Shown piece after piece: positions 1 through 59,234 of a stretch of 64,000 bases of DNA. Position numbers and translations under genes: made by a program. Under the pieces are notes generated by a model that had not been told where the DNA came from, ran no database searches, and worked only from the letters and a program-made list of their open reading frames with translations. Every line of letters starts with the position of its first letter. Position 1 is the stretch's first letter. Source of the DNA: Isurus oxyrinchus (lineage: Eukaryota); the NCBI GenBank assembly GCA_026770705.1, contig JANJGN010000052.1:1054001-1118000 (forward strand), written 5' to 3'.

Positions 1-1007
1 GAATTCAATTATTTCTCAAACGGTAGATTTGATGTCATTTTATTGAAAACTTCCTCAGTGCCTCCCTGAAGGGTTTACACTCTCTGGGAAGCAGGAATAG
101 GCTGGATGTTGGGGAGTTCATCTTTTCCCAGAGAGTAGTGATCCTCGGGAATGTGCTGTCAGTGGGAGTGGTGGTTGCTGATTCTCTGTCGCCTTCAAGA
201 GGGATCTGGAGTCGTTACTGACTGGGGGAGAGATCATGGAAACGGAGAATGATACAGCACAGGAGGAGGCCATTCAGTCCATTGTGCCTGTGCCAGGTCT
301 TTCAATGTTCTATCCAATCAGATCCACTAACCACCATTCCAATTTGCCCCCATCTTCCTCCTTTAAGTATTTATCCAATTTCCCTTTTGAAAGTTCCTAT
401 TGAATCTGCTTCCACCGCCCTTTCAGGCAGCACCTTCCAGACCACAACAACTCGCTCTGTCAAAACAAATTCTCCTCATCTCCCCCTCCGGTTCGTCAAT
501 CTGTGTCCCTCTGGTTACCGACCCTCCTGCCCCTTAAGTACATTGATACTGTTCACCTCAACCACTCCCTGTGGGAGCGAGTTCCACATTCTCCCGTCTC
601 TCTGGGTAAAGATTGGAACTGTTTATTAAGCGGGGGGTGTAAGTCCGTGAGGGAGTCCATCTCGATCCTGCCCGATTCGCACACGCGTCCGAGATGGATT
701 TCCACCCTGCACTAAACGTTTCCAGAATTTTCTACAGCACAATCCTGTACACAGCGATGGAGAGAAACATTGGACAGGGAGTCCAACAGCACAATGATCC
801 ATTCTCACCAATGTTCCACGCTAAGGGGAAAGTTCCGATTGTCCACTCTTAGAGTGTTTACAATGAAAACATTCATTCCACATTGAATCCCAGTAAATGG
901 CTCAATATTACAGCAAATGTTGCAGTGATATGAAGCTTGATTGTTCAGCCAGAGTGAGAGATTGAAAGCGGAGAGTCAGTGATGATTTCTTTCTGTGTGT
1001 TCTCTAG

Positions 1008-1147
1008 ACAGTGGAGGAGAGATTCTGCACGTGATCCTGATCCTGGGAATACGAGCTGTGATATTCCTTGTGGCTGTGGTTATCACTATCGCTGGAGTCT
1101 GTGTCTGGGAGAGACAAACACTGAAAGGAAGTCGACAGACTGTTTGA
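1008..1147 (+). CDS. Terminal coding exon of an activating-type Siglec-like receptor (TM with Arg + short tail); upstream exons lie left of the window
   Basis: Acceptor ttctgtgtgttctctAG at 1006-1007. The phase-1 frame reads xSGGEILHVILILGIRAVIFLVAVVITIAGVCVWERQTLKGSRQTV*. The hydrophobic TM contains one Arg, and the exon is paralogous to 56079-56218. Confidence 0.8.
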
Positions 1148-1261
1148 AGCTTTGTACAGCAACAATCTGGTCAGTCAGTGCGGACAAATAACGTGTGATG
1201 TTGGGTTAAGTTGTAAAGAAACTGGTCAGTGTCCTGGTTAGAATCACCTTCGTATCAGAGA

Positions 1262-1870
1262 GGCATTCCAGCACAGTAGGAGTCCATTCAGCCCATTGAG
1301 TCCATGCTGTCTCTGTGTAGAGCAATCCACTCAGTCCCATTTCCCCCTCTCTATCCCCGTATCTCTGCAAGTTTATTTCCCCTCAAGTGTCCAACCAATT
1401 TCTGTTTGATATCGTTCATCGTCTCCACTTCCACCATCCTCGTAGGCAGCGAGTTCCAGCTCATTACCACTCGCTGTGTAAAAAAGTTCCTCCTCACATC
1501 CCCCCTCTGCCCAAAACCTTCAATCTGTGTCCCCCAGTCCTTGTACCATCAGCTAATGGCAACAGCTTCTCTTTGTCTGCCTTATCTAAACCCATCATCA
1601 TCTTGTACACCTCGATCTGATCCCCCCTCAATCTCCTTTGCTCCAAGGAGAACAACCCCAGCTTCTCCAACCCAACCTTGTAGCTAAAATCCCTCATCCC
1701 TGGACCCATTCTGCTCAATCTCCTTCCCACCCTCTCAAGGACCCTCACTTCCTTCCCAAAGTGAGGAGACCAGAACTGGGCCCAATACTCTAGTTGTGAC
1801 CTAACCAGTGCTTTATAAATGTTCAGCATAACCTCCCTGTGTTTGTACTCAATCCCTCGATTTATGAAAA
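1262..1870 (-). mobile_element. CR1-type LINE 3' fragment (RT C-terminus)
   Basis: Minus ORF contains RGIEYK..VML.IYKALVR..LEY..QFWSPH and LGLFSLEQRRLRGD.IEVYKMM, typical of the CR1 ORF2 end. Confidence 0.9.
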
Positions 1871-2223
1871 GCTTATTCTTTCCATCAGCACAAACAGCAA
1901 TTTCCAAGCGGACTCCCATCAGCAGACAGTGCAATGAAACATCGGCATGCCTGCTTCTTAATGTACGGAGAGAAACCTGCAACGAGAGATTCTCCTTCTT
2001 CTCCTCAGCAAGCTGAAACTTTTCCTTATACCTGGTGCTCCCCAGTCCTGCTGTGTGGACACATCATAACCACGGCATTGTCTGGCTGTGTGCAGCCAAC
2101 ATGGTCGAATAGGAATGAACAGAAATGTGACGTTGCTAAACTCTGTTCTCTGATTGGAATGTGCTTTCTGAATGCTGCACCTTTTTCATGCTGCGATAGA
2201 TTGTAAGAAGCATTTGGGTTATG

Positions 2224-2229
2224 AATAAA
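2224..2229 (+). terminator. Putative polyadenylation signal of the left-edge activating Siglec-like gene
   Basis: AATAAA ends a block (2083-2260) homologous to the 3' UTR behind the ITIM exon at ~31375-31510. Confidence 0.5.
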
Positions 2230-2574
2230 ATTACATTGATTAACACAAGTGATTAAAATGCTCAGGCTGTTCTGTAGCTATTTATAGATTAAAATTCTTA
2301 TTTTGCTGCCAAATTCTTGCCTCAAAGACATTACTTCATGTTGTCACGTTTTCCAATCAGATGAATTCCTGTGCCCATCTTTATAATAGAAATTTCCAAA
2401 GTAAACATGTCACATTGCAGCTGCACACACTCCTGCCAGTGGGTGGTGCGATATGAAGGCTGCCTTGCTGCTCAGAAACAGCGAGAAATATTCCTGTTTT
2501 TGCATGAACTTCATGTGTGCATGAGACACAGGCATCAGATGCAATTTTGTACAATTTGTACAATGTTCTTTAGA

Positions 2575-2825
2575 CAGCGCAGCACTGCCTCTGTTCAAAC
2601 CCTCCAACAGTGCAGCACTCCCTCAGTTCAAACCCTCCGACAGTGCAGCACTCCCTCAGTTCAAACCCTCCGACATTGCAGCTCTACCTCAGTTCAAACC
2701 CTCCGACAGTGCAGCACTCCCTCAGTTCAAACCCTCCGACAGTGCAGCACTCCCTCAGTTCAGACCCTCTGACAGTGCAGCACTCCCTCAGTACTGATCC
2801 TCCGACAGTGCTGCACTACCTCACT
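2575..2825. repeat. 33-bp minisatellite (CAGTGCAGCACTCCCTCAGTACTGACCCTCCGA family)
   Basis: Direct tandem units are visible in the sequence. Confidence 0.95.
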
Positions 2826-7536: not shown

Positions 7537-7965
7537 TCACACATTCACTTGCACACTCACACACCCACACCCACACAGACACACTGACACACTCACTCAT
7601 TCACATTGACACACACTGACACAGTCACACACACCCACACAGACACACTGACACACTCACTCATTCACATTGACACACACTGACACAGGCACACACACCC
7701 ACACAGACACACTGACACACTCACTCATTCACATTGACACACACTGACACAGTCACACACACCCACACAGACACACTGACACACTCACTCATTCACATTG
7801 ACACACACTGACACAGTCACACACACCCACACAGACACACTGACACACTCACTCATTCACATTGACACACACTGACAGTCACACACACCCACACAGACAC
7901 ACTGACACACTCACTCATTCACATTGACACACACATATTGACAGTCACACACACACACACACACG
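7537..7965. repeat. CA-rich compound tandem repeat (~66-bp unit)
   Basis: Repeated unit cacccacacagacacactgacacactcactcattcacattgacacacactgacacagtcaca. Confidence 0.9.
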
Positions 7966-8294
7966 CTCATAAAGACAGACACAAACACAGTCACGTGAGG
8001 TGAATAGTGTCGATGTATTTAAGGGGAAGCTGGATAAACACACGAGGGAGAAATGAATAGAAGGATATGGTGATGGGGTGAGATGGAGAAGGGGTGGGCG
8101 GAGACTCGTGTGGAGCAGAAACACCAGCATGGAGCAGATGGGCCGAATGGCTTCTTTCCCTGCTGTAAAACGCAGGTAAAGTTTCAGTTGGAATTAATGA
8201 ACAGGGCCTGTGTGAAATAGATTGCTAAGCAATGATAAGGAGGGGAGAGGCTGTGGCATGGTGCAGGATGACCTTGCGTGAATGAGGCCAGGGT

Positions 8295-8411
8295 CTAATA
8301 TCTACAGCAGAGACCACAAGTCTCATTTGATTCTCTCCAATTACAGCAGTTACAGCAGAATCTGCAGAGCTGCTGTCTGCCCATTCTCTTCTGGCGCTGC
8401 AGCAAGGAGCC
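8295..8411 (-). CDS. HAMP: Hepcidin exon 3: furin site + mature peptide
   Basis: Acceptor tgcttttccAG. Phase 0 reads GSLLQRQKR|MGRQQLCRFCCNCCNWRESNETCGLCCRY*. An RxKR furin motif precedes the hepcidin 8-Cys pattern C-x2-CC-x-CC-x(n)-C-G-x-CC. Confidence 0.93.
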   Translation of the reverse strand, partial: GSLLQRQKRMGRQQLCRFCCNCCNWRESNETCGLCCRY

Positions 8412-8494
8412 CTGGAAAAGCAGGAGCACAATAGGTGAGAACATTCCGGAAAGAAAGAAGGCATCATTTCAATCAGGCGCGTCATTGGAAGGAG

Positions 8495-8880
8495 GATGGC
8501 GCATTTCTATAGCGCCTTTCCCCTCCTCAGGATGGCCCAAAGTGTTCCACAGCTGAAGGAAGGACTTTTTCTGAAGTGGGCTCACCGCTGTAATGTAGGA
8601 AACGCAGCAGGCAATTCACGCACAGCAAGATCCCACAAACAGAAATGTGATAATGGCCCCGATTTTCAGTTTTTTACCAATGTCAGTTGAGGGATAAATG
8701 TTTGCCCCAGGAAAGTGGACATAACTCCACCCATCCAGCCCGCACCACCCCCTCCACACATACCCCCCAACTCCTGACGCACTTCATCTAAATTGTGGCC
8801 ATGGAATCCTCTATATCCACCTGAGAGGGCAGATTGGTTGCCCCAGTTTAATGTCTCATCTGAAAGACAGCGCCTTCAAC
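8495..8880 (-). mobile_element. Deu-domain (SacSINE1/AmnSINE-like) SINE; related copies at ~9320-9490, 10895-11200, 28270-28660
   Basis: Contains CACAGCAAGATCCCACAAACAG, GAGGGATAAAT and CCACCTGAGAGGGCAGA, and runs directly into the 33-bp minisatellite. Confidence 0.65.
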
Positions 8881-9210
8881 AGTGCAGCACCCCCTCAGTA
8901 CTGACCCTCCGACTGTGCAGCACTCCCTCAGTACTGACTCTGACAATGCAGCACATCCTCAGTACTGACCCTCCAACAGTGCAGCACTCCCTCAAGACTG
9001 ACCCTCTGACAATGCAACACTCCCTCAGTACTGACCCTCCGACTGTGCATCCCCCCGCCGGTACTGACCCTTCGACAGTGCAACACTCCCTCAAGACTGA
9101 CCCTCTGACAATGCAGCACTCCCTCAGTACTAACCCTCTGACAATGCAGCACTCCCTCAGTACTGACCCTCTGACAATGCAGCACACCCTCAATACTGAC
9201 CCTCCGATAG
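8878..9210. repeat. 33-bp minisatellite (hepcidin intron 2)
   Basis: Tandem CAGTGCAGCACTCCCTCAGTACTGACCCTCTGA units. Confidence 0.95.
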
Positions 9211-10740
9211 CTCGGTCATTCCTCAATTACGCCTGGTGGTCCTTTTAACTCAGAGCTGAGAGTTGCAGAGAATCGAGCAGACACCCTGAACTGACACTTG
9301 CAGTGCAAGTACTGGGAGCGCGCTGGTCATTATCATGCTGCTGTCTGTGGGATCTTACAGTGCGCCAATGGCTGATTCTTTTCCCACATTACATCAGTGA
9401 CCTCACATGAAAGAAAAAAGCACTTGATTGTCTGCGAAACACTTTGGGACGTCCTGATGTGTTGGAAGGCGCTAGAGAAATGCAAGTCCTCTTTGTCTTT
9501 CACTCGATCCTCTAAGGTGTCTGTTGATTAACCAGCCTCTCGGTGTATGATGTAGGCCTGGTTATAAACAGTTAGAAGGATCAAATATCAAAAGTGCTTT
9601 GGCTGACAGTCAAACCGATTGTGCATTCGGAGAGATTAGATATGGTCTGCACACAATGACTCCAGTCTCTGGCACTGAATGCCGCCTGGGGTCTCCCTTC
9701 CACATAACAATCACAACTTGCATTTACACAGCGCCTCTGACATTGCAAAATGTCCCAGCCCACATTACCGGAGCGTAAATCAGAGAGAAGTCTAACACTG
9801 AGTCACATATGGAGATATTAGGGTTAGGTGACCAAAAGCTTGGTCAAAGATGTCAGTTTTTAAGGAACGTCTTAAAGGAGAGAGAGAGAGAGAGGCAGAG
9901 AGGTTAAGGGAGGGTATTCCGGAGCTCAGGGCCCCAGGCAGCTGAAGGCACGGCCACCAATGGTGGAGCGATGGGAATCAGGGGGTCCCGGGAGATGCAG
10001 TAATGTCAGAGATTTTGGAGGAACATCGGGACCGGAGGAGGTGTTCTCCTGCTCCATATCTCTCTCTCTCTTCCTCTCATCCACTCCTCCTCTCCCTGTC
10101 TCTCTCTCTCCTACTCTTCCTCTCAATTGCCCTCTCTCCCAATCTTTCTCTCCTCTCTCCCTTTTCCTGTCTCTCTCCCTCTCTCTCCCCTGTCTCCTTC
10201 TCCCACTCTGTATCTCTCCCTCTCTCACACTATTTTTGTACCTTTCGCTCACTCTGTAACTCTCCCTTTCCTGTTAATTTCTCTCTCTTGGACAATCTCT
10301 CTTCCCTTTTCACTTTCCCTCACTCTGCATCTCTTCTTTAATTTCTCCCTCTGTCACTCTCTCCCACCTATGTTCTTTCCCTTTCACCCCTCCCCGTCCC
10401 ACTCTCTGTCTCTCTCTTCCAATCCCTCCCTCCCCCATTCCATCCCTCTCTCCGACTCTCGACTCCCAGCCTCTCTTTAACCCACTCCCAGGCTGGATCA
10501 GTCTCCCTCTCACTATTCCCGGCGTGGGTTACATTTAAAATTCCTGTGGGGATATGTTCACTTCCTTGGAATTGCCTCTTCCCAGCTTTGCAAAAAAAGG
10601 GGGGGGGGGCTCGATTTCAAACATGCCTCCTGAGTATAACCGAGACAGACTGCCACTGAAATCAGCTTGAAATCAGAAAACTTTCTGTGGAAGAAACGAG
10701 CAGGGAGAAACCTTAAAATAAGGAATGAATTTCCACCTAC

Positions 10741-10797
10741 CGTGTCCGGGGAATCCACAGATTTCTCAATCGTCGAAGAACCTAAAGCAGTGTCAAC
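10741..10797 (-). CDS. HAMP: Hepcidin exon 2 (pro-region)
   Basis: tttctttttgcAG|GTT...ACG|GTaggt. The exon is 57 nt, phase 0-0, and reads VDTALGSSTIEKSVDSPDT; the other two frames have stops. Size and phase fit the short acidic HAMP exon 2. Confidence 0.8.
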
Positions 10798-11204
10798 CTG
10801 CAAAAAGAAAGAATTTATCAGGGAGAAAGTGAGAGGAGGATTGAGGGAGAGGGAGAGAGAGAGAGAGAGGTACAGGAGAGAGAGGGGGAGGAGGACAGAC
10901 TTGCATTTCTCTAACGCCTTTCACCACATCCCAAAGCATTTCACAGCCACTGAAGGATGTTTTTGAAGTGCACTCACACTGTAGGAAATGTGGCAGCTGA
11001 TTTGTGCACAGCAAGATCCCACAAATAGCAATGTGATCATGGCCTAGATCATCTGTTTTTGGTGATGTTGGGTGAGGGATAAATATTGGTCCCAGGACAC
11101 CGGGGAGAACACCCCCTGCTCTTCCTCCAAATAGTGGCTGTGGGATCTTTCACACCCGCCCGAGAGGGCAGACGTGGGACTCAGTTTAATGTCTCATTCA
11201 ACAT

Positions 11205-11650
11205 TGTTGTGCTCCCTCAGTACTAACCCTTTGACACTGCAGCACTCCCTCAGTACTAACCCTTCGATAGTGCTGCGCTCCCTCAGTACTGTCCCTCCGT
11301 CAGTGCAGCTCTATTTCAGTACTAACCCTTCGACACAGCAGCACTCGCTCAGTACTGACCTCCGACAGTATAGCACTCCCTCAGTACTGTCCCTCCAATA
11401 GTGCAACACTTCCACTCTACTGACCCTGTAACAATGCAGCACTTCCTCAGTACTGACCCTCCGTCAGTGCAGCGCTCCCTCAGTACTGACCCTCCGACAG
11501 TGCAACACTTCCACAGTACTGACCCTGTAACAATGCAGCACTTCCTCAGTACTGACCTCCGACAGTATAGCACTCACTCAGTACTGTCCCTCCAATAGTG
11601 CAACACTTCCACACTACTGACCCTCTGACAGTGCAGCACTCCCTCAGCAC
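11205..11650. repeat. 33-bp minisatellite (hepcidin intron 1)
   Basis: Tandem units following a Deu-SINE fragment. Confidence 0.9.
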
Positions 11651-37189: not shown

Positions 37190-37695
37190 CTGTAAAAACA
37201 GCCATGAATTACTGCACTACAGGTTTGGAATGATGCTCCGATGTATCTCTTCCTCCCTCCTCTCCATCTGTAAAGTGCCTAGTCTTAAGATGAGGNNNNN
37301 NNNNNNNNNNNNNNNNNNNNNNNNNNNNNNNNNNNNNNNNNNNNNNNNNNNNNNNNNNNNNNNNNNNNNNNNNNNNNNNNNNNNNNNNNNNNNNNNNNNN
37401 NNNNNNNNNNNNNNNNNNNNNNNNNNNNNNNNNNNNNNNNNNNNNNNNNNNNNNNNNNNNNNNNNNNNNNNNNNNNNNNNNNNNNNNNNNNNNNNNNNNN
37501 NNNNNNNNNNNNNNNNNNNNNNNNNNNNNNNNNNNNNNNNNNNNNNNNNNNNNNNNNNNNNNNNNNNNNNNNNNNNNNNNNNNNNNNNNNNNNNNNNNNN
37601 NNNNNNNNNNNNNNNNNNNNNNNNNNNNNNNNNNNNNNNNNNNNNNNNNNNNNNNNNNNNNNNNNNNNNNNNNGTTGAAGTTTGCATTAACTCAC

Positions 37696-38495: not shown

Positions 38496-40480
38496 TATGG
38501 TCAGGTGGAGCACCATGTACCTTTAAGAGAATGCAAGCGGACTAACCATGTGACAGTACTGACCAATCATCAGACAGGTTGGGCTACTGGGTAACTGTAT
38601 TTCTCGAGCTGGAGGTGGTTGTGGGGGTGCGCAAGGATTCAGTGTTCAGTCCTCTGCTGCAATAAATAATCACAGTTTGTTCTTGTGTCTGTCTCTGTCC
38701 GTTACTGATAGTAAGAATCAACTAGCGAGTGTATATGAAGGTGTGCAATTCGAGTTTACTCGACTGGTGAATTCAGAGACTCAAGACATAAAACTGGGGG
38801 TGAGGATGAACACAGCTAAAAACACAGCCCCTGAGTGAGGACCCACAAGGCCAGTGCGCAGAGCATTAGAAAGAGAATCTGTACGGTGGGTGTAAAATAG
38901 GCTGCAGTCCGAGCAGGAAGCAGTGCTGCACTGAGAATTTGGGGGAAAAACCCTGCAGAATCCTGATCACAGGGATCCCAGCAAAACTCAAAGAGAGCAC
39001 GAAACCCAGCACAGAAAAGACAAGAGCGACAGAGAGGGAGTTAACAAAGAGGTGACTGCTCTTAAAGCAACAATACATTTAAAGAGGTACATGCAAGGAC
39101 AATGGCTGTGGACAGAATGTTATAAGAGACCCCAGAGAGCGGGTAACTCTGCGGAAGGTAAAAGATGAATCAATCGACGGCAGTGAAGGAAGCTGCAGTA
39201 AGACAAACACCTGAATTGGACATTAACTGGGAAGACATCGGAAGTGCTGCCCCCTTGCAGTCGTCGACGATGCTGCAGTTCCGGCGTGTCGATCCATTCA
39301 ACCCCATTTCAGGTGACTGGTCTCAGTGTGTCGAACGCCTAGTGTTCTTTTTTACCGCTAATGACATCACGGGAGAGGAGAAGAAGAGGGAGATTCTTGT
39401 ATCCACATGTGGGAGCAAAACGTCCGGGCTGATCCTCAGCCTCACGTCACCGACCATCCCCGACTCGAAGACTGTCAACCAGTGAATAAAAATTGTTCCA
39501 AACCACCTGAGACCACAGCCCTCAGTTACTATTCAGCACTTCATCACCCATATCAAACCCTCACCCTACCGCCCAGCATCGAACGGCAGGGCTGAGCAGG
39601 GCATCCAAACCTTTAAATCCAGGGTGAGAATGATGGAAGGGGATTCCATCGGCATGAGATTGTCCTGGTTCCTCTTCACAAACTGGGCCAGGCCACAAAC
39701 AACGACCAGCATTGGCCCTGCAGAACTACTAATGAAGAGACATCTCCGCACCCACCTGACCCTTATCCAGCCGGATTTAAAGGGGAGGCTGGAGAAAAGC
39801 CAAGAGACGCAGGAGACCAGGCACGATGGTCGTGCTGGAAAAGAACTTTCACTGTGGGAGGTGCAGTCCTCGCGATGAACTATGGAGATGGGTCCAATTG
39901 GCTGTTAGGCGAGGTGAGTGCAGTAACTGGATCCCTCTCCTCTCATGTATCAGTAAACGACACGTGGATCATTTCCCCAAAATAACGCTGGTCCCACAAG
40001 AAGAAATGAAGTCTTCATCTCCACTTGAGTCTGGGCCACATGTAGAGGACAGGTCCCAAAATTTGGAAGGAGAAACATTCGAGAAAGCCTCCTGAGAGAC
40101 TTGATTTGTAAATAGTTATTAGTGTAATTAGTTCACTGGTTATTAAGTTTGTCAACTGCACTTTTTAAGTAAAGGGGGAAGGATGTGGTAAAGTGGAGTT
40201 CCATGTACAGTTAAGAGAATGCAAGTGGATAAACCATGTGACAGTGCTGTCCAATCATTGTACAGTGCGGGCTACTGGTTAACTGTAAGTCTAGAGCTGG
40301 AGGTGGGTGTGGGAACATGCAAGAATTTAGTGCTCTGCCCTCTGTTACAATAAATAATCAGCTTGTTCTAATGTCGGTCTCTCTTGGTTATTGATAGCGA
40401 GCATCAACTAACAAGTGTATATGAAGGAGTGCAATTTGAGTTTACTCAACCAGTGAACTCATAGACTCAAGATATAAAAC
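38496..40480 (+). mobile_element. Internally deleted Ty3/Gypsy element with two LTRs (38496-38794; 40184-40480)
   Basis: Direct ~300-bp repeats; PBS-like TGGGGGTGAGGAT at 38795; PPT AAAGGGGGAAGGA at 40171-40183. Gag DWSQCVERL.FFF.ANDI...STCG and integrase TTSIGPAELLM.RHLRT.L.LI.P. Confidence 0.85.
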
Positions 40481-40489
40481 CAACAAACA

Positions 40490-42200
40490 GTCAGGGAGAG
40501 ATGGACAATCCAACATGTGATCACATTTCAGAGATGTGTAAGAATAATAAAGCAGTAATACTCAGGGATTTTAACTACCCAAATATTAACTGTAACAGCT
40601 TTAGTGAGCAAGGTAGGGAGGGAGAAAAATTCTGAAGTTGCATCCAGGAGAAGATTTTTAGTCTGTGCATAGAAAGCTCAACAAGAGAGGGGACAGTTCT
40701 GGACCTAATATATGGAAAAGCGCCGGGAAAGGTGGAAAGCGTATCAGTAGGGGAGATAGTGACTGTAACTCAATTGGATTTAGGACAGTTATGGAGAAGG
40801 ATAAGTTTGTGCTGGGAATAAAAATTCTAAACTGGGGAAAGGCTAATTGTACTAAGATGAGATATGATTGGGCCTAAGTGGACTGGGAGAAGCTCTTTGC
40901 AGATAAAACTGTGTCAGAGCAGTGGGAGGCATTCAAGGAGGGAATAGCGAGAGTACAGAGCAGATATCTTCCTGTAAAGACAAAGAGGGAGACCAAGTCT
41001 GGAGAACCCTGGAAGAAAAGGAACATAAAGGTTAGGATTGAGGAAAAAGAGAAGCTTATGGCAGATACTGAGGGCTCAATACAGCAGAGTCCCTAGAGGA
41101 GTACAAATAGTGCAGAGGGGAACTGAAAAAGGACATTAGGAAAGATAAGCGAGTGCATGAGAAAGCACTGGTGGGTAGAATACAGCAAAACCCAGAGGGG
41201 TTTTTTAAATATGTAAAGAACAGGAGAATAACTCGGTAAAGAGTGGGGCCGATTAGGGACTATCGAGGTAATGTGTGTGTGGACCTGGAAGACGTGGGTA
41301 CAGTCCTCAATGAATACTTTGCATCAGTCTTCACAATGGAAAAGGATGATGCAGGTATAACATCAGGGTGGAGGGCAGTGAAATATGAGAGGAAATTAAC
41401 GCGGAGAAAGGAGGTACTAGTGGGTTTAGTGGCCTGAAAAGTGGATAAATCCACAAGCCCAGATGAGATGAATCCAAAGCTGTTGAGGGAGGCAAGGGAA
41501 GAGATATCAGGGGCCCTGGCAGTAATTTTCAAATCCTCTCTGGCCACAGGTGAGGTGCCAGAGGACTGGAGGATGGCTAATGTTGTCCCATTATTAAAAA
41601 AGGGAGGAAGGGATAGATCAGGAAATTACAGGCCAGTCAGTCTAACCTCGGTGGTGGGGAAGTTACTAGTAAGAATTCTGAAGGACAGAATGAATCTGCA
41701 CTGGGAGAGACAAGGATTAATCTGGGATATTCAGCATGGATTTGTTAAGGGAAGGTCATGTTTGACAAACCTGATCAAATCTTTTGAGGAGGTAACCAGG
41801 AGTGTTGATGAGAGTAATGCCTTTGTTGTGGTCGACATGGGCTGAGGAAGGCTTTTGATAAGGTGCCTCTTGGCAGAGAGGCCAAGAAAGTAAGAGCCCA
41901 TGGGATCCAAGGCAAAGTGGCACGTTGGATCCAATATTGGCTGAGGCAGGAAGCAGAGGGTGATGGTGGAGGGATGTTTCTGTGACTGGATGTCTGTTTC
42001 CAGTGGGGTTCCACAGGGCTCAGTGCTGGGGCACTTGCTGTTTGTGGTGTAAATAAATGAATTGGACTTAAATATAGGGGGAATGATCACGACGCAAATG
42101 GAATTCAACCTGGAAAAGTGTGAGGTGATGCACTTGGGGAGGGAGTTGCTGATCAGCATGGATATTGTGTGCTAAATGGCCTCCTTCTGTCCTATAAGTG
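40490..42200 (+). mobile_element. CR1 LINE (EN-RT remnants), shared with gene C intron
   Basis: DFNYPNI.W, TGEVPEDWR.ANVVPL.KKG...NYRPVSLTSVVGK, QHGFVKGRSCLTNL and GVPQGSVLG. Confidence 0.92.
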
Positions 42201-42389
42201 TCTATGAGTCTATGAGTCCATGATGCACTGTCGGAGAGTCAGTATTAAGGATGTACTGCCTGTCAGGAGTCACCTTTTACCAGTTAAAGACCAATGGTTT
42301 GTTGGTCAACAAAATGCAGTATGTGGGAGCTTGCTGTGCACATTTTATACTATTCCAGCTAACGTAGAATGAAGGATGTCCATACTTAC

Positions 42390-42686
42390 CTTGCACAGTT
42401 AGTACGAGGGTCCGCTCCGATGAAACAGATGGATATCTCACTCTGCAGCTGAGAGTGTGTCCGTGGGGTTTGAGTGATGGGATCAGGGTCAGAACAGAAG
42501 TATAGGTCAGAGTGACACCATGCTGAGTTACAGTGTTTGAGACTGATCCAGGTACGTCAGTGGGAGTGTCCCAGGTTAAGACAGGTGCTGCTGTTCCATT
42601 GCACGTTGTGTTGAAGGTGCAGCTTACATCCACACGCCTTCCTGCAATAATTTCAGCAGGGAATATCGTGGGTTTATCTGTGAAAT
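42390..42686 (-). CDS. Gene B Ig domain 2 (Siglec C2-set)
   Basis: 297 nt, phase 1-1. DFTDKPTIFPAEIIAGRRVDVSCTFNTTCNG...LTW...TSVLTLIPS..HGHTLSCRVRYP. Includes the extra Cys expected for the V-C2 interdomain bond. Confidence 0.93.
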
Positions 42687-43629
42687 CTAACAGACAGAGA
42701 ATGGATCCTTTTAGAGAAATATAATGTGAAGCATCAGTTCAAATAGAAACCACAGTCCCACAAGAGAAAGCACTTTTACAAGGATGATATCAGAACTGAG
42801 AGATTACAATGATCATTAAAGAATTGTCTATTTTTACACTTGTTGAATCTCTGTCACTCAGATTAATACACTCTCACTCAGTGACCCTTGATTTGACCAG
42901 ACTGGGTGAGGGTGGAGGAACAGCTCACAGCTCGGGGAGAACAGACTCAGCATTTGGAAAAGGATATCGAGACACTGGAGAGGGTGGTAAAAAGCTTCAC
43001 AAGGATGATCTCAGCAATGTGAGGCTTTACCTATCAGGAGAGGATGTACAGGCTGGGACTCTGTTCTCTTGAACAGAGAAGGTTGAAGGGTGACCTCATT
43101 TGACCTTTGAAGTAATGAAAGGTTTTGATCGAGTAGACATGGAGAGAGTGTTTCCACTCCTCACAATGAAGAAAACCAGAGGCTGACAATATAAGATCCT
43201 CACTAATAAATCCAATGGGGAATTCAGGAGAAACTTCTTTAACCAGAGAGTGGGGCGAATGTGTGCTTCAAGAATTTCTTCATTGCCTGTGAAATGATTT
43301 GAAGTTTGCTGAGGTGGTGTAAGGCGCTATAGGAATGCACATCCTTCTTTTGTCAAATTGTTAGACATTTAAAAAGCATTAGGTAGACTGATGTACGTGG
43401 ATAACCTGATAACATTGATGGACACAGTCAATACATTTAATCATTGATATTAAAGTAAGTATTAGAGGTTGCTTTAGGACTGAACTGGAAGCTATCACCA
43501 GGTTATTGAGAATCAGACAGTGTGTTATAATAAGCTGTGTTTTGTGTTAATATGTAAACGTCACAGATTGTGTTATTTCCCATTGAGTGTTGAATGTGAA
43601 TTGTTGAGTAATTATAACACAGCACTTAC

Positions 43630-43998
43630 CAGAAACGTGAAGCTGGGTTACAGGGTAATAGTTATGGCTCGGACCATTGTCAAATTCTATTCTGAAAAAA
43701 TAAGGTCCTTCATCGTCCCGTCTGATGTTGTTTATAATCAGGGAACAGTCGCCATCTTTCAGGTCTCCAGACAGCCGGGTCCGATGGTGGAACCGTGGTA
43801 ACTCGTGACTGTGATCCTTGGAGTGAAAGGCAATGGGAGGCCAGAATTTGTATTTCTCATTATTTAACCAGATTCCGACTTGTCGTTTGTTTTCAAGATA
43901 TGCTGGATAACTGTAGTGACACCGAATCTGTACACACGAACCTTCCTGCGCTGTCACCTCTCGTGGAGTGTCACCTTTCCACTCTTGTGACAGTCCAA
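43630..43998 (-). CDS. Gene B V-set sialic-acid-binding-type domain
   Basis: 369 nt, phase 1-1. W..AQEGSCVQIRC.Y.YP...GIW...RTRLSGDLKDGDCSLIINNIRRDDEGPYFFRIE. The Siglec B/E-strand Cys pattern and essential F-strand Arg are present. Confidence 0.95.
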
Positions 43999-44891
43999 CT
44001 GGGGAGAGAAATATCAATATTTAACCCTGGATCCTCATTGTCTAAGGAATCTCTTTGGATCCTCATTGTCTAGGGGATTATTTCTGATCCAGACCCCATA
44101 TTGTTGTATTGTTGATTCCGATGCAGCATTGTAGACTGACTTGTCCCCAAGCTCAGCACTGACCCTACTCCAGCAGACACTGTGAAACACACTAACAAAG
44201 TGCCTCTAGCCTGAGCTCTACATGTGTCGAGAGAAAGACAAATATACAAACTGAATATTGACCCCTTTACACACGGACAGCTTTACCTTCCTTCTCTCTT
44301 TCAGTTATCTTGCTCCCTTATTGAAGTATCTAGCAAGGTGAGAATGGACAGGAAGTGTGACACTGAACAGCCTGTCTATTCTAGGAGCTGCTGTGTTGTC
44401 TTTATGGGAAATTCTGACTAAAATCAGCAAAAGACACTAATTTCAGGCCATTGCTGTCAGAGTCCTAGCCACAAGATAGACTTCATCCCCTGAATTTTGT
44501 GTCCGATTTTCTACTCAAACTTTCACCTCCGCACACACCCACCCTGACCCCACAAGTCACTCGCTGACCTACACTGGCTCCCAGTCCAGCAACACCTCGA
44601 TGTGATTATTTTCACACTTGATTTCCAATCCCTCCATCACTCCGCTCCACTCCTTGTCTCTGTAACCGCCTCCAAACCTACAACTCTCTGTGATCTCTGC
44701 ACTCCTCCAATTCTGCTGTCAGACAGGGAGTCAGTGTATATCAGTGAGCAAAGGGGTGATAGGTGAATGGGACTTGGTGTGAGTTTGTACACTGGCTCAC
44801 TGCTGAATCAGTTCCCAGTCACAGCTCAATAAGAATGATCTTTTACGAAGACTATTAACCATAAATCTGTCTGAGCTGACGATGATATTAC

Positions 44892-46630: not shown

Positions 46631-46904
46631 TAAAGAACATTGTACAAGCTTCACAAATTTGCATCTAATGCCTTTGTCTCATTAACTTCATGTGTACAAC
46701 AGGAATATTTCTCGCTGTTTCTGAGCAGCAAGGCAGCTTTGATATCACACCACACACCAATGGCAGGAGTGCCTAACTACAATGTGACATGTTTACATGG
46801 GAAGTTTCCATTATAAAGATGGGCACAATAATTCCCATGTTTGGAAAATCGTCACAACATGAAGTAATGTCTTTGAGCCAAGATTCTGCAGCAAAATGAG
46901 AATT

Positions 46905-48725
46905 TTAATGTGGTGCTTGAGTGATGAGATCAGGGTCAGAACTGAAGTATAGGTCAGAGTGACACCATGCTGAGTTACAGTGTTTGAGACTGATCCAGGT
47001 ACGTCAGTGGGAGTGTCCCAGGTTAAGACAGGTGCTGCTGTTCCATTGCACGTTGTGTTGAAGGTGCAGCTTACATCCACACGCTTTCCTGCAATAATTT
47101 CAGCAGGGAATATCATGGATTTATCTGTGAAATCTAACAGACAGAGAATGGATCCTTTTAGAGAAATATAACGTGAAGCATCAGTTCAAATAGAAACCAC
47201 AGTCCCACAAGAGAAAGCACTTTTACAAGGATGATATCAGAACTGAGAGGTTACAATGATCAGGAAAGATTTTCTTGCTCTTTGGCAGTAGTGTTTCTGT
47301 CTCTCAGCTTAATACACGTTCACTCCGAGACATGTGAATTGAGAACACTGGATGAGAGAAGAGGCTCAGACCAGAGATTGGAGTTAAAAGCAGAATACTG
47401 CGGATGCTGGAAATCTGAAACCAAAAGAAAAATTGCTGGAAAGACTCAGCAGGTCTGACAGTATCAGTGGAGAGGAAGACAGGGTTAACGTTTCGAGTCC
47501 GTATGACTCTTCATCAGACCAGAGGTTTGAGTTCACTGGCTTCTCATTTCCTCAGTGATCTGGGTGATTTATTACATTGTGGTTTGTTGGATCTTGCTGT
47601 GCACAAACTGCCTGCTGTGTTTAACATCTGTGTCTATTCTGACTGCAGCTGTGATGTAGTCGTGGTGATTTTCAGTAAAATGAAACCCTCTGAGCTCCTC
47701 CATCCCCGAGGTTTAGCGAGTGAATTCCAGAGCTCAGGGCCCAGGCAGCTGAAGGCCCGGCCGCCAGTATTGGAGTGAAGGGAATCGGGGGATGGTCAAG
47801 AGGCCGGAATTGGAGTAACACAGAGATCTGGGACGTTGGTTGGGAGAGTTGCAGGAGATTACAGAGATAAGGACGCAGTGTGAGGCAATGGATGCATTTG
47901 AACAAAGAGATGTGAATTTTAAGTTTGAGATGTTGTAGGACCAGGAGACAGATAGTTTAGGGGTGATGGGTGAATGGGACTTGGTGTGAGTGTGTAAACT
48001 GGCTCACTGCTGAATCGGTTCCCAATCACAGTTCAATAAGAATGACCTTTTACAAAGGTTATTAACCATAAATCTGACCGAGCTGACGATGATATTACCT
48101 TGGAGAAGTGACATGAGGAAGTAAGATTTTCCAATCATTATCCACTCCCAGATATTTCATCAGCTTCTCACTCTGAAACTCTGAAAGCGAAAGGAGTTAA
48201 TGAGACCTCACCTCTTGTCCAACAGCTCTCGAGAGATCAGAACTGCTTTTAGACAATGTCTTCACAGAATAATTTGATTCTCTGTGGGATGATAGGTGTT
48301 CTGCAGAGAGTTCCAAGGCTTTAAGAATGAAAAACAACAAAGGACTTGCATTTCTATAGCACCTTTCACCACATCGGGACACCCCAAAGTATCTACAGTT
48401 CCCTCATCCCTTGAGCTAGAAAGATGTTCTGTACAACAGACTTGAGCCTCACACCCAGATCTCAATAATCAGTCGAAATCCTTCAAAGGCATCAATCATT
48501 GGAATCTGTCTTTATAAAGTCACAACAACAACAAAGGACGGTGTTGGTGGTGGAAGTGAATTCCAATCGTTCCGTTACTTACCCAGGACCTGTCCGACTG
48601 CTCGCCTGGGGAGGAACTGCCCACACGCTCTGCTTGGGCTGAATGACCTCTTCCTGTGCTGCTCCCTCTGTGTGTTTAATTAGAAAGGGTTGATGTGTCA
48701 CTGTGAGACAAAATGAGGAAGTTGG
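46905..48725 (-). pseudogene. Siglec fragment D: promoter exon + signal exon (48099-48138) + truncated domain-2 exon (to 47134); no V exon
   Basis: The signal exon reads MIGKSYFLMSLLQ. D2 is near-identical to its paralogs up to SLKHH, then fuses to sequence homologous to 54660-54940. There is no V-set sequence between 47134 and 48099. Confidence 0.85.
47385..47520 (-). mobile_element. Penelope-like terminal-repeat fragment containing a minimal hammerhead ribozyme motif
   Basis: The minus strand reads GGT CTGATGA A GAGTC-ATACG-GACTC GAAAC GTTA ACC (47520-47483). Related copies lie at 20550-20635 and 58940-59150. Confidence 0.6.
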
Positions 48726-50313
48726 ATCAAAGTGACAGAGCAGCTCATGTTTTGAGATGTTGGTGAACTGTTAACCCGTTGTATCCTGACCCTGTGGTGA
48801 TATTTCTGCTCACTGATGGACACTCATTAACCAGGAGTTTCTCCTGTGGGTAAGTGGTTTTCACACCCGAACTCAGGGAGTCAGTATGTTGTAGAATTTT
48901 GTGGGGTTCAAGACCCCATTCAGCAGATGCCTGCCCCACAGTGCAGACTGAAATTCCCCAGTGTCAGTACTGAGGGAGTGCTGCACTGTCAGAGGGTCAG
49001 GACTGAACGAGTGCTGCACAGTCAGAGGTTCAGTACTGAGGGAGTGCTATACTGTCAGAGGGGCAGTACTGAGGGAGTGCTGCACTGTTGGAGGGTCAGT
49101 ACTGAGGGAGTGCTACACTGTCAGAGGGACAGTACTGAGGGAGTGCTGCATTGTCGGAGGGTCAGTGCTGAGGGAGTTCTACACTGTCAAAGGGACAGTA
49201 TTGAGGGAGTGCTGCACTGTCGGAGGGTCAGTACTGAAGGGGTGCTGTGCTCTCGGAGGGTCAGTACTGAGAGTGCTGCACTGTCAGAGGGACAGTATTG
49301 AGGGAGTGCTAATCTGTCGGAGAGACAGATTTGAGGGAGTGTTGCACTGTCAGAGGGACAGTACTGAGGAATTGTTACACTGTTGGGGGGTCAGTACTGA
49401 GGGAGTGCTACACTGTCAGAGGGACAGTACTGAGGGCGTGCTGCACTGTCAGAGGGTCAGTACTGAGGGAGTGCTACACTGTCAGGGGGTCAGTACTGAG
49501 GGAGTGCTGCACTGTCAGAGGGTCAGTACTGAGGGAGTGCTGCACTGTCAGGGGGTGAGTACATTGCGATTCCTGCTCTGCTCTATCAGCCCCTTGGCTG
49601 GACATAAAAGCCCCTGTGTTAATGTTCAGAAACGGTTATTAATTGTATTCTGGTCACCATTTTATTTAAAAAACAGATTATCTGATTGTCATCAGAATAC
49701 CTTTCTATGGGATCCTGCTGTGCGTAATCTAGACTGTTCCAGCGAATGCATAATGAAGGGTGTCCGTTCTTACCTTGTACAGTTAGTACGAGGGTCCGCT
49801 CCGATGAAACAGATGGATATCTCACTCTGCAGATGAGAATGTGTCCGTGGTGTTTGAGTGATGAGATCAGGGTCAGAACAGAAGTATAGGACAGAGTGAC
49901 ACCATGCTGAGTTACAGTGTTTGAGACTGATCCAGGTACGTCAGTGGGAGTGTCCCAGGTTAAGACAGGTGCTGCTGTTCCATTGCACGTTGTGTTGAAG
50001 GTGCAGCTTACATCCACACGCTTTCCTGCAATAATTTCAGCAGGGAATATCGTGGTTTTATCTGTGAAATCTAACAGACAGAGAATGGATCCTTTTAGAG
50101 AAATATAACGTGAAGCATCAGTTCAAATAGAAATCACAGCCCTAAGATTAGAGATAGATGGGAGTGGATGACCTGATAACATTGATGGACACAGTCAATA
50201 CATTTAATCATTGATATTAAAGTGAGTATTAGAGGTTGCTTTTGGACTGAATGGAAGCTATCACCAGGTTATTGAGAATCAGACTCTGCGTTATACTAAA
50301 CTGTGTTTTATGT

Positions 50314-51037: not shown

Positions 51038-52746
51038 GTGTTATTATGTAAACGTCAGAGTTTGTGTTCATTCCCATTGAGTGTTGAATGTGAATTGTTG
51101 AGTAATTATAACACCGCACATACCAGAAATGTGAAGCCGGGTTACAGGGTAATAGTTATGGCTCGGAGCATTGTCAAATTTTATGCTGAAAAAATAAGGT
51201 CCTGCATCTTCCCGTCTGATGTTGTTTATAATCAGTGAACAGTCGCCATCTTTCAGGTCTCCAGACAGCCGGGTCCGATGCTGGAACAGTGGTAACTCAC
51301 GATTATTATCCTTGGAGTGAAAGGCTATAAAGAATCTTATCAAGACTTTGTCATTAAATCAGATTCCAATTTGCGGTTGGTTTTCCAGACACGATGGGTA
51401 GCTGTAATGACATGGAATCTGTACACACGAATATTCCTGCGCTGTCACCTCTCGTGGAGTGTCACCTTTCCACTCTTGTGACAGTCCAACTGGGGAGAGA
51501 AATATCAATATTTAACTCTGGATGTTTTGTAGCTTCACTAGACTCGATATCCACCCCATCCTTCACTGGGGCACAGTGGCTGCTGTGTGGACCATCTACA
51601 GGACACACAAGGAACTCCCCAAGGTTTCACAATGGATGGAAGAGAATCCTGGACACAGGAGTGGACAATTTCATTCTACATTGGCTCATGGTTCTCAGGA
51701 CCCTGTTTAGTGAAGCCAGTCTTCCACCCAACACAGTGTCTACAAGATACACAGGGAAACTGTGTAAATATCTCATCTCTCTACACTGACGGTTTACCTT
51801 TCAGTTAATTCATTTCGTTATGGTGAAACTGTGCAAGAAGTGTGAGGGCTGGACCCTCTGTCTATTCTGAATGCTGCTGTGATGTAATCATGGCCTCTCA
51901 GGGAATGGACTATTGGAGTTTATTCATCCCTGAATTTTGATTTTGAATTCCAGAGCTCGGGGCCCAGGCAGCTGAAGGCACGGCCGCCAATAATGGAATG
52001 ATGGGAATCGGGGGATGGTCAAGACGCTGGAATTGGAGGAGTGCAGAGATCTCGGAGGGTTGTAGGTACTGGAGGAGATTACAGAAATAGGGAGGGTTGT
52101 AATGGTGGACGAGGTTACAGAGAAAGGGAGGTTTGTCGGGGCTGGAGAAATTAACAGAGATAGCGAAGGATATAGGGGCTGGAGTTGGTTATAGAGTTAG
52201 GGAGAGTGGGTAGGGGCTGGAGGAGGTTACTGAGATAGGGAGGATTGTAGGAGCAGGGCAAGGTTACAGAGGTAGGGAGTAATATATGTGCTGGAAGATT
52301 TTATAGAGATAGGGAGGTTGGTATGGGCTGGAGGAGGTAACATGGATAGGGAGAGTTGCAAAATTTTGGAGGGATTTCTACAGGATGACCTGGATTTTAA
52401 TTTTCTGTTGCTGTCAGACAGGGAGTCAGTGAATATCAGTGATCACAGGGGTGATGGGTGAATGGGACTTGGTGTGAGTTTATACACTGGCTCACTGCTG
52501 AATCGGTTCCCAATCACAGCTCAATAAGAATAATCTTTTACAAAGACTATTAACCATAAATCTGTCCAAGCTGACGATGATATTACCTTGGAGAACTGAC
52601 AGGAGGAAGTAAGATTTTCCAATCATTGTCCACTAGCATGATATTTCATCAGCTTCTCACTCTCAAGCTGTGAAAGAGAAAGGAGTTAATGAGACCTCAC
52701 CTCTTGTCCGACAGCTCTTGAGAGATCAGCACAGCTTTTAGATAAT

Positions 52747-55000: not shown

Positions 55001-55006
55001 TTTATT
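55001..55006 (-). terminator. Putative polyadenylation signal of gene C
   Basis: AATAAA on the minus strand at the end of the conserved 3' UTR block. Confidence 0.5.
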
Positions 55007-55359
55007 CATAACCCAAATGCTTCTTACAATCTATCGCAGCATGAAAAAGGTGCAGCATTCAGAAAGCACATTCCAATCAGAGAACAGAGTTTAGCAACGT
55101 CACATTTCTGTTCATTCCTATTCGACCATGTTGGCTGCACACAGCCAGACAATGCCGTGGTTATGATGTGTCCACACAGCAGGACTGGGGAGCACCAGGT
55201 ATAAGGAAAAGTTTCAGCTTGCTGAGGAGAAGAAGGAGAATCTCTCGTTCCAGGTTTCTCTCCGTACATTAAGAAGCAGGCATGCCGATGTTTCATTGCA
55301 CTCTGTCTGCTGATGGGAGTCCGCTTGGAAATTGCTGTTTGTGCTGATGGAAAGAATAA

Positions 55360-55965
55360 GCTTTTCATAAATCGAGGGATTGAGTACAAACACAGGGAGG
55401 TTATGCTGAACATTTATAAAGCTCTGGTTAGGTCACAACTAGAGTATTGTGTCCAGTTCTGGTCTCCTCACTTTGGGAAGGAAGTGAGGGTCCTTGAGAG
55501 GGTGGGGAGGAGATTGAGCAGAATGGGTCCAGGGATGAGGGATTTTAGCTACAAGGTTGGGTTGGAGAAGCTGGGGTTGTTCTCCTTGGAGCAAAGGAGA
55601 TTGAGGGGGGATCTGATCGAGGTGTACAAGATGATAATGGGTTTAGATAATGTAAACAAAGACAAGCTGTTGCCATTAGCTGATGGGACAAGGACTGGGG
55701 GACACAGATTGAAGGTTTTGGGCAGAGGGGGATGTGAGGAGGAACTTTTTTACACAGCGAGAGGTTATGAGCTGGAACTCGCTGCCTACGAGGATGGTGG
55801 AAGTGGAGACGATGAACGATTTCAAAAGGAAATTGGACGGACAATTGGAAATAAACTTGCAGAGATACAGGGATAGAGAGGGGGAATGGGACTGAGTGAA
55901 TTGCTCTACAGAGAGACAGCATGGACTCAATGGGCTGAATGGGCTCCCACTGTGCTGGAATGCCT
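55360..55965 (+). mobile_element. CR1 LINE 3' fragment (paralog of 1262-1870)
   Basis: LEYCVQFWSPH and LGLFSLEQRRLRGDLIEVYK. Confidence 0.9.
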
Positions 55966-59226: not shown

Positions 59227-59234
59227 CAACAAAC

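What the first reader, a model, noticed from the sequence alone, without database searches (positions are those of the whole stretch)
8298..8384. Atypical mature hepcidin: no His/ATCUN N-terminus, 4-residue loop insertion and an N-glycosylation sequon
Seen: MGRQQLCRFCCNCCNWRESNETCGLCCRY (29 aa, net charge about +2). Cys7/10/11/13/14 match human hepcidin-25 positions. The hairpin loop is 8 residues (NWRESNET) rather than 4 (HRSK) and contains N-E-T. Established: the N-terminal DTHFP (fish HAMP1 QSHLS) segment is needed for ferroportin regulation, and teleost HAMP2-type peptides lacking it are mainly antimicrobial. Inference: this is an independently derived antimicrobial-type or glycosylated hepcidin, or one co-evolved with a divergent ferroportin.
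Basis: partly seen in the sequence, partly recalled or inferred. Interest (0 to 1): 0.75.

Follow-up and report, generated by a model that had tools for sequence, protein, structure and literature searches.

The report
Long-loop shark hepcidin gene copy
This is the last exon of a real hepcidin-family gene whose peptide has a doubled hairpin loop and lacks the usual iron-hormone start; the peptide is transcribed in the animal, but it is a side copy of the hormone, and this particular copy has a faulty first splice site.

Summary
On the minus strand, 8298-8384 encodes MGRQQLCRFCCNCCNWRESNETCGLCCRY, directly after an RQKR convertase site. It scores above Pfam's Hepcidin cut-off. Its loop is 8 residues, against 5 in bass and 4 in human hepcidin.

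Contigs of one run (X1) join three exons, 13452-13360, 10797-10741 and 8411-8295. No difference from the window is listed in the mature-peptide codons.

Two things temper the finding. First, the same run holds a contig that shares the pro-region but continues S-H-L-S-I-C-M-Y-C-C, a Hamp1-like start. The long-loop peptide is therefore a paralogue and not the animal's only hepcidin. Second, this copy has T, not G, at the first base of intron 1. It also has letters at 8232/8233, 8427, 9679 and 13759 that no laid run shares. The RNA therefore probably comes from sister copies.

Earlier notes of this scan describe the same peptide on many other stretches of this genome.

Function was not tested. 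A defence-type, "Hamp2-like" role is the most likely reading. Glycosylation of N-E-T is possible but unshown. I could fetch no orthologues from distant cartilaginous fishes.

The parts
8298..8384 (-). Mature peptide codons, 29 aa: MGRQQLCRFCCNCCNWRESNETCGLCCRY
   Evidence: Translation. Pfam Hepcidin hit. PDB alignments.
8295..8411 (-). Exon 3 coding part: 38 codons (GSLLQRQKR plus the mature peptide) and the stop codon. The acceptor ...ttttccag lies directly before 8411.
   Evidence: Splice joint 8410/8411 to 10740/10741 in 9 contigs of X1, and in 0 contigs of X3, X10 and X12.
8385..8396 (-). RQKR, an R-x-K/R-R convertase (furin-type) site before the mature peptide. A second, minimal R-x-x-R site (RMGR) ends three residues further on.
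   Evidence: That it is cleaved is an inference from the motif.
8319..8342 (-). Hairpin loop NWRESNET, 8 residues between Cys14 and Cys23. The N-E-T sequon is 8327-8319.
8046..8294 (-). 3' untranslated region covered by X1 contigs. At 8232/8233 the window differs from every laid contig. One X1 contig leaves the window sequence below 8046.
   Evidence: tables 2, 3, 4 and 7.
10741..10797 (-). Exon 2, 19 codons (VDTALGSSTIEKSVDSPDT), phase 0 at both ends.
   Evidence: Joints in X1.
13360..13452 (-). Exon 1 coding part as used in the transcripts: ATG at 13452, signal peptide MGSSQMKWRLVLFTLTLLLSLQLSHFFSLS, then AGG.
   Evidence: Joint 10797 to 13360 in 8 X1 contigs.
13358..13359 (-). First two intron letters at the junction used by the transcripts. 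They read TT in this copy, not GT. The only GT (13360-13359) gives a frameshift and a stop after 5 codons.
   Evidence: ends CT..AA on the plus strand, both = 1..
43547..44017 (-). Neighbouring Siglec-type V-set exon, for context. Sister exons lie at 62659-63129 and 51068-51343.
   Evidence: phmmer against PDB: myelin-associated glycoprotein 2.8e-13, Siglec-5 5.8e-12, CD33, sialoadhesin. ORFs.

Best explanation
This is the last exon of one copy of a multi-copy hepcidin paralogue of a probable shark, lying among Siglec/MAG-like genes.

The gene encodes a signal peptide, a short pro-region and an RQKR convertase site. Cleavage there would release a 29-residue, eight-cysteine peptide. Its hairpin loop is twice the usual length and its start is MGRQQL, not the His-containing start of iron-regulatory hepcidins.

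The animal makes this peptide's mRNA. It also makes a sister hepcidin with a Hamp1-like start (SHLSI). The long-loop form is therefore most likely a defence-type side branch, analogous to teleost Hamp2 but arisen separately, and the sister keeps the ferroportin-regulating role.

The copy in this window has T in place of G at the first intron base. It also carries private letters that are absent from all laid reads. It is probably a silent or unproductive duplicate, and the RNA comes from sister copies.

Shown: the sequence, family membership, splicing of the transcripts and the existence of the sister transcript.

Inferred: cleavage, the fold, the defence role and the silence of this copy.
For: - Family: Pfam Hepcidin 31.8 bits against a cut-off of 27. 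Eight Cys in register with the bass and human structures.
- Transcripts: GT-AG joint for intron 2 in 9 X1 contigs, and an intron 1 joint in 8 X1 contigs. Neither appears in the DNA-like runs X3, X10 and X12.
- Coding identity: no listed X1 difference in 8298-8384.
- Sister gene: X1 loose end at 8382 (1 contig, 38 letters) reads SHLSICMYCC after the shared ...QKR-M (table 7, translated by hand).
- Function by analogy: sea bass Hamp1 QSHLSLCRWCC... lowers ferroportin and Hamp2 HSSPGGCRFCCNCC... does not (PMC5665920, abstract and one passage). The window's core CRFCCNCC equals the Hamp2/1S6W core.
- Binding patch: His3, Phe4, Ile6 and Phe9 in human hepcidin (PMC7915682). Here only Phe9 is kept, plus a conservative Leu6.
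- This copy differs from the reads: all contigs of all four runs differ from the window at 8232/8233, 8427 and 13759, and all three runs that cover 9679 differ there. X1 intron contigs differ by 4 to 6 letters per 220-340 bases (table 8).
- Frame: spliced at its only GT, this copy's frame breaks.
- Many copies: notes of this scan (unchecked). X3 shows mixed letters, for example at 9359 (1011 of 1247) and 8579 (740 of 1448).
Against: - No function was tested.
- Phe9, Cys7 and Leu6 are kept, so some ferroportin binding is not excluded.
- The sister transcript rests on one contig and 30 printed letters.
- All runs were contigs, so expression level and the copy of origin cannot be measured. The tool itself warns that depth cannot rank genes or parts of a gene.
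- The DNA contigs that cover the donor (X3 13332-13601, 1 other letter, 0 gaps; X12 13242-13645, 9 other letters) show no inserted G. I could not see which letters differ, because 123 rows of differences were not shown. I therefore cannot show that any copy has a GT there.
- The private letters of the window could be assembly errors.
- No orthologue from a distant cartilaginous fish was seen here.
Confidence: 0.6

Rival explanations
1. This very copy is transcribed, and its first intron is cut at TT-AG (or GT-CA). That would be a rare non-canonical junction that keeps the frame. The copy would then be a working gene.
For: - The junction seen in 8 X1 contigs fits the window letter for letter, with TT..AG ends.
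- No inserted base at 13360 is listed for X3, X10 or X12.
- The exons match the RNA.
- TTAAGC keeps positions +3 to +5 of the donor consensus (sequence; the consensus is recalled).
Against: - A G-to-T change at intron position +1 normally abolishes splicing (established knowledge, recalled).
- The window differs from all RNA contigs at 8232/8233 (6 of 6 X1 contigs).
- Other notes of the scan report sister copies called intact (unchecked).
- A copy with GGGTAAGC would give the same mRNA.
Confidence: 0.17
2. The long-loop peptide is still an iron hormone. It would bind a ferroportin that co-evolved with it, for example the second ferroportin of cartilaginous fishes.
For: - Cys7, Phe9 and a hydrophobic residue at position 6 are kept.
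- In the docked model of the ferroportin-hepcidin preprint, called speculative by its authors, the disulfide-rich part faces outwards. A longer loop need not clash (bioRxiv 10.1101/2020.03.16.993006, passages).
- Some cartilaginous fishes have a second ferroportin without Cys326 (PMC8235187).
Against: - His3 and Phe4 are lost.
- A sister transcript with a Hamp1-like start exists.
- In sea bass, the peptide without that start did not lower ferroportin.
Confidence: 0.13
3. The loop carries an N-glycan on Asn20, and the mature product is a glycopeptide. This is compatible with either role above.
For: - N-E-T is present.
- None of the differences listed for the organism C run X12 lies in the loop codons.
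- NXT sites in the last 50-55 residues are glycosylated by STT3B about as efficiently as internal ones (PMC3613688, abstract and passages).
- Cysteine-proximal sites are served by MagT1 (PMC4137057, abstract).
Against: - The site must be modified before four disulfides form in a very small domain.
- A sequon arises easily by chance.
- The species compared are only about 3-4% apart, and 6 of the 16 differing letters of the organism C contig were not shown.
- There are no mass data.
Confidence: 0.3
4. The peptide itself is a decaying, functionless product.
For: This copy has a faulty donor. Exon 3 differs between organisms A and C at 4 listed places, 3 of them amino-acid changes.
Against: All eight Cys, the convertase site and the open frame are kept. 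The same coding sequence is in spliced RNA contigs with very high word depth.
Confidence: 0.05

Closest known systems
Human hepcidin-25 (HAMP; PDB 1M4F, 2KEF, 3H0T, 6WBV)
   Same: - Eight Cys, with the first five in the same positions.
- Six residues before Cys7.
- A convertase site directly before the peptide.
- Three exons with the peptide in the last one.
- Neighbours of the MAG/Siglec kind. That HAMP lies beside MAG and CD22 in mammals is recalled, not tested.
   Different: - Loop of 8 residues, not 4.
- Arg3 and Gln4 in place of His3 and Phe4, so no X-X-His start and half of the binding patch is lost.
- An N-E-T sequon.
- Many gene copies.
Sea bass Hamp2 / bass hepcidin (PDB 1S6W)
   Same: - The core CRFCCNCC is identical, and the end CGxCCR plus an aromatic residue is similar.
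- It lacks the Hamp1 start.
- It coexists with a Hamp1-like sister.
- Hamp2 does not lower ferroportin.
   Different: - Loop of 8 residues against 5.
- Probably a separate duplication, because the sister transcript shares the pro-region up to the Met codon.
- Orthology with teleost hamp2 was not tested.
- Activity was not tested.
Sea bass Hamp1 (QSHLSLCRWCCNCCRGNKGCGFCCKF)
   Same: The family and the Cys frame. The SHLSI sister transcript in run X1 resembles it.
   Different: The window's peptide has MGRQQL, not QSHLSL, and a longer loop.
Hepcidin gene expansions in teleosts (for example large yellow croaker, PMC6240063)
   Same: Many hepcidin copies with diverged mature peptides.
   Different: I saw only that paper's listing and the start of its abstract. 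Here the copies lie among Siglec-like genes, and their number rests on unchecked notes of this scan.

Membership tests
Hepcidin family (Pfam PF06446) | Profile match above the curated cut-off | tested here: met
   31.8 bits against 27, E 1.8e-7, profile positions 23-52 of 53.
Hepcidin family (Pfam PF06446) | Eight cysteines in the frame C-x2-CC-x-CC-loop-C-x2-CC | tested here: met
   Cys at 7, 10, 11, 13, 14, 23, 26 and 27. In register with 1S6W and 1M4F.
Hepcidin family (Pfam PF06446) | Secreted prepropeptide with a basic convertase site directly before the mature peptide | tested here: met
   A hydrophobic leader in exon 1 and RQKR at 8396-8385. Cleavage itself was not tested.
Hepcidin family (Pfam PF06446) | Three-exon gene that splices into one open frame | tested here: inconclusive
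   The transcripts of X1 do so. In this copy, however, the first junction falls on TT, and its only GT breaks the frame.
Hepcidin family (Pfam PF06446) | Four-disulfide beta-hairpin fold | not testable with these tools
   AlphaFold2 without an alignment gave two helices, pLDDT 74. I take this as uninformative for a disulfide-rich peptide.
Iron-regulatory hepcidin (HAMP / Hamp1 type) | N-terminal patch His3, hydrophobic or aromatic residue 4, Ile/Leu6, aromatic residue 9 | tested here: not met
   Arg3, Gln4, Leu6 and Phe9, so 2 of 4.
Iron-regulatory hepcidin (HAMP / Hamp1 type) | Causes ferroportin internalisation or lowers ferroportin | not testable with these tools
   This needs a cell assay.
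Teleost Hamp2-type (defence) hepcidin | Lacks the Hamp1 start while a Hamp1-type sister exists in the same animal | tested here: met
   MGRQQL here. An SHLSI contig in run X1 (table 7; one contig).
Teleost Hamp2-type (defence) hepcidin | Common descent with teleost hamp2 genes | not tested
   No tree was possible because no homologues could be fetched. The shared pro-region with the sister argues for a separate duplication.
Teleost Hamp2-type (defence) hepcidin | Antimicrobial activity | not testable with these tools
   This needs MIC assays.
N-glycosylated peptide | Occupied N-x-S/T sequon | not testable with these tools
   The sequon is present. Occupancy needs mass spectrometry.

The most novel reading that the evidence does not exclude
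Sharks have amplified, to many copies among Siglec-like receptor genes, a new structural class of hepcidin. It has a doubled loop, glycosylated at its tip, and is made in very large amounts. Its task is neither classical ferroportin control nor simple bacterial killing. It might, for example, be a ligand of the second, Cys326-less ferroportin, or a sialylated peptide read by the neighbouring Siglec-type receptors. A lesser but also unusual possibility is that its first intron is really spliced at TT-AG.
Probability: 0.12. Interest if true: 0.75.

Novelty: new variant of a known kind. Interest (0 to 1): 0.38.

Why it matters
Hepcidin and the ferroportin cysteine it binds are said to appear first in fishes, with Cys326 first seen in cartilaginous fishes (PMC8235187). 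How the hormone and its defence-type sisters diverged in that lineage bears on the origin of vertebrate iron control.

A long-loop, possibly glycosylated paralogue that arose separately from teleost Hamp2 would be a second, independent split into hormone and defence peptide. The gene also escapes ORF-based annotation.

In the five searches that required the word hepcidin I found no paper that describes a cartilaginous-fish hepcidin sequence. The only direct mention was hepcidin among nurse shark plasma proteins (PMC9207270, one passage).

The value of this locus is lowered by two things: its faulty donor, and the fact that the scan has already met the same peptide on many other stretches of this genome.

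Tried and rejected
- **Chance ORF:** rejected (Pfam; 0 pattern hits in 200 shuffles).
- **Plus-strand reading:** it has a stop.
- **A second hepcidin exon in the window:** none. CC.CC occurs twice in the six frames, and the other case is an unrelated stretch at 30887. The self-BLAST shows no copy of the three exons.

**Homologue searches led nowhere:**
- phmmer of exon 3 against 1.84 billion representatives gave 1 hit, a 1442-aa repeat protein matched on a short CRF-like stretch, which I take as chance.
- The search for homologous proteins found no candidate, twice.
- The protein atlas gave one hit at 0.76, below its own lead level.

I therefore could not test whether the long loop is usual in other cartilaginous fishes, which notes of this scan assert.

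**Structure:** AlphaFold2 on exon 3 alone gave helices. I did not search folds with it.

**Assembly error:** a GGG-to-GG contraction at the donor is unlikely, because the X3 and X12 contigs that cover it list no gap there.

**Cross-species conservation is only weakly shown:**
- Of the 16 differing letters of the organism C contig 8189-8578, 10 are listed.
- Of the 7 differing letters of the organism B contig 8215-8726, 3 are listed.
- Unlisted changes in the exon therefore cannot be excluded.

**Papers:**
- Searches were badly built. With min_terms 2 the word hepcidin was not required, and they returned almost nothing on hepcidin.
- PMC3225996 is not held.
- Supplements were not opened. Those of PMC9207270 may hold the nurse shark hepcidin sequence.

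**Left out:**
- Exons 1 and 2 were not searched at all.
- The N runs (25288-27884 in parts, 37296-37673) were left as they are.

Full report
**What is there.** The finding lies on the minus strand. The reverse complement of 8298-8387 reads RMGRQQLCRFCCNCCNWRESNETCGLCCRY, and the plus strand has a stop. Extending upstream gives a pyrimidine-rich tract and AG, then GSLLQRQKR, the 29-residue peptide and a stop at 8297-8295. RQKR is 8396-8385 and the loop NWRESNET is 8342-8319. The peptide has Cys at 7, 10, 11, 13, 14, 23, 26 and 27, one sequon (NET at 20-22), pI 8.2 and a charge of +1.4 at pH 7.

**Not chance.**
- The 44 residues around it hit Pfam Hepcidin at 31.8 bits, against a cut-off of 27 (E 1.8e-7).
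- The cysteine pattern occurs once in the six frames of the window and never in 200 shuffles.
- Against PDB chains, the only two matches are hepcidins: bass 1S6W and human 1M4F. Their gaps of 3 and 4 residues fall in the loop, and the first five Cys are in register. Those E-values (0.21 and 1.2) are weak by themselves.

The loop is 8 residues, against 5 in both sea bass peptides and 4 in man.

**Gene and transcripts.** Upstream on the minus strand lie two more exons:
- a 57-base exon, 10797-10741 (VDTALGSSTIEKSVDSPDT);
- an exon with an ATG at 13452 and a hydrophobic leader.

I laid contigs of four coded public runs on 8000-13900. In run X1 only, 9 contigs join 8411 to 10741 with GT-AG ends, and 8 contigs join 10797 to 13360. 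X3, X10 and X12 have 0 such joints, so they behave as DNA and X1 as RNA.

X1 contigs over the three exons have word depths of 1e5 to 8e5, against about 6e2 to 2e3 over unique intron stretches. The tool warns that contig depth cannot rank parts of a gene, so I take this only as a sign of strong transcription. Among the listed differences, X1 has none in 8298-8384. However, 123 rows were not shown.

**The first junction.** The transcripts hold one more G than a GT-AG cut of this copy would give. The skipped stretch has ends TT..AG or, shifted by one letter, GT..CA (both = 1). With that G the frame runs ...SLS-R-VDTAL. Spliced at its only GT, this copy reads ...SLSRLTLL and then a stop.

A copy with G at 13359 (AGG|GTAAGC) would give exactly the observed mRNA. 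The DNA contigs over this place list no gap (X3 13332-13601, 1 other letter; X12 13242-13645, 9 other letters). I could not see which letters differ.

**Is this copy the source of the RNA?** Probably not.
- At 8232/8233 all contigs of all four runs differ from the window (X1 6 of 6; X3, X10 and X12 1 of 1 each).
- The same holds at 8427 and 13759. At 9679 it holds for the three runs that cover the place.
- X1's intron contigs differ from the window by 4 to 6 letters in 220-340 bases (table 8).
- One X1 contig leaves the window sequence below 8046.
- X3 shows mixed letters at several places (9359: 1011 of 1247; 8579: 740 of 1448; 13754: 1236 of 1773). That fits several copies or two alleles.

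Earlier notes of this scan, which I did not check, say that the genome holds many such copies among Siglec-like genes. Some are called intact and some have this faulty donor.

**A sister hepcidin.** Table 7 lists one X1 contig that fits the window down to 8382, the last letter of the Met codon, and then goes on differently for 38 letters. I translated the 30 printed letters by hand. They give S-H-L-S-I-C-M-Y-C-C. After the shared RQKR-M, this transcript therefore has His3, Leu4, Ile6 and Tyr9.

That is close to sea bass Hamp1, QSHLSLCRWCC (PMC5665920), and to the human patch His3, Phe4, Ile6 and Phe9 (PMC7915682). This supports, from my own call, the claim in other notes that the animal also transcribes a hepcidin with the usual start. 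It rests on a single contig.

**What the peptide most likely does.** In human hepcidin, activity is traced to the first nine residues (PMC7915682, abstract and introduction). In the docked model of the ferroportin-hepcidin preprint, called speculative by its authors, the N-terminus enters the cavity and the disulfide-rich part faces outwards (bioRxiv 10.1101/2020.03.16.993006, passages). In sea bass, Hamp1 but not Hamp2 lowered ferroportin in fish and in mouse macrophages (PMC5665920, abstract).

The window's peptide keeps Cys7, Phe9 and Leu6. It has Arg3 and Gln4, and its core CRFCCNCC equals that of Hamp2. With a Hamp1-like sister present, the most likely reading is a defence-type side branch that arose separately from teleost Hamp2. 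This is inference. Weak or altered ferroportin binding is not excluded, and some cartilaginous fishes have a second ferroportin without Cys326 (PMC8235187).

[quoted passage not shown] Sites in the last 50-55 residues are glycosylated after translocation by STT3B. NXT sites are modified about as well as internal ones, but only before folding (PMC3613688, abstract and passages). Cysteine-proximal sites need MagT1 (PMC4137057, abstract). Glycosylation is therefore possible and unshown. I put it at about 0.3.

**Related species.** Run X12 (organism C) shows four listed changes in exon 3:
- one silent change (Arg8);
- Leu6 to Phe;
- Gln4 to His;
- Gln to Leu in the pro-region.

None of the listed changes lies in the loop or the Cys core. 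Only 10 of that contig's 16 differences were listed, the species are close, and in a multi-copy family the contig may be a paralogue.

**Surroundings.** The window holds Siglec-type exons. The V-set exon 43547-44017 matches myelin-associated glycoprotein at 2.8e-13, and also Siglec-5, Siglec-7, Siglec-8, CD33 and sialoadhesin. In mammals HAMP lies beside MAG and CD22. That point is recalled and was not tested.

**Searches that failed.** No homologue could be fetched, so there is no tree and no survey of loops in other cartilaginous fishes. The fold prediction was uninformative.

**Verdict.** This is a real hepcidin-family exon with the features described. The peptide is a transcribed paralogue and is neither the only hepcidin nor a decayed one. 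This copy is probably an unproductive duplicate. The scan has met the same peptide many times elsewhere in this genome. I rate it a new variant of a known kind, of moderate interest.

Noticed in passing
window 13358-13361 (minus strand): The transcripts place the first exon-intron junction on TT, one base past the only GT. Either sister copies have G at 13359, or this is a rare TT-AG intron.
   Followed up: partly
window 8382, run X1 (table 7): One RNA contig shares the pro-region and then encodes a Hamp1-like start (SHLSICMYCC). This points to a second, hormone-type hepcidin gene in the same animal, outside this window.
   Followed up: partly
window 8232-8233, 8427, 9679, 13759: Letters of the window that no covering contig of the four laid runs shares. 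They are private changes of this copy or assembly errors.
   Followed up: partly
window 9556/9557 to 10740/10741: One X1 contig joins the exon 2 donor to a site inside intron 2, with GT-AG ends, skipping 1183 bases. This is a minor alternative or cryptic acceptor.
   Followed up: no
window 11710-13158 and 15847-17677: A 37-base minisatellite of about 39 copies fills much of intron 1. The same repeat lies in inverted orientation about 2.4 kb upstream of the gene.
   Followed up: partly
window 7562-7961: A 64-base CA-rich tandem repeat, 6.2 copies, 96% matches, just downstream of the gene's 3' end.
   Followed up: no
window 8879-9207 and 11212-11647: 33-base tandem arrays of the same unit in opposite orientation within introns 2 and 1, next to SINE-like sequence. 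The DNA runs pile up here with depths above 1e6.
   Followed up: no
window 40403-44862 and 59149-64000: A direct duplication, 95-97% identical, that carries Siglec-type V-set and C2-set exons. Further C2-set copies lie at 46811-47116 and 49619-50017.
   Followed up: partly
window 2-2823 and 54408-57225: An inverted repeat of 2.8 kb, 94.8% identical, that bounds most of the window.
   Followed up: no
window 13516-13712: X1 contigs still cover 13515-13556 at word depths of about 1.5e4 to 2.2e4, upstream of the TATA-like gtataagagc. Some transcripts may start further upstream than that motif suggests.
   Followed up: no
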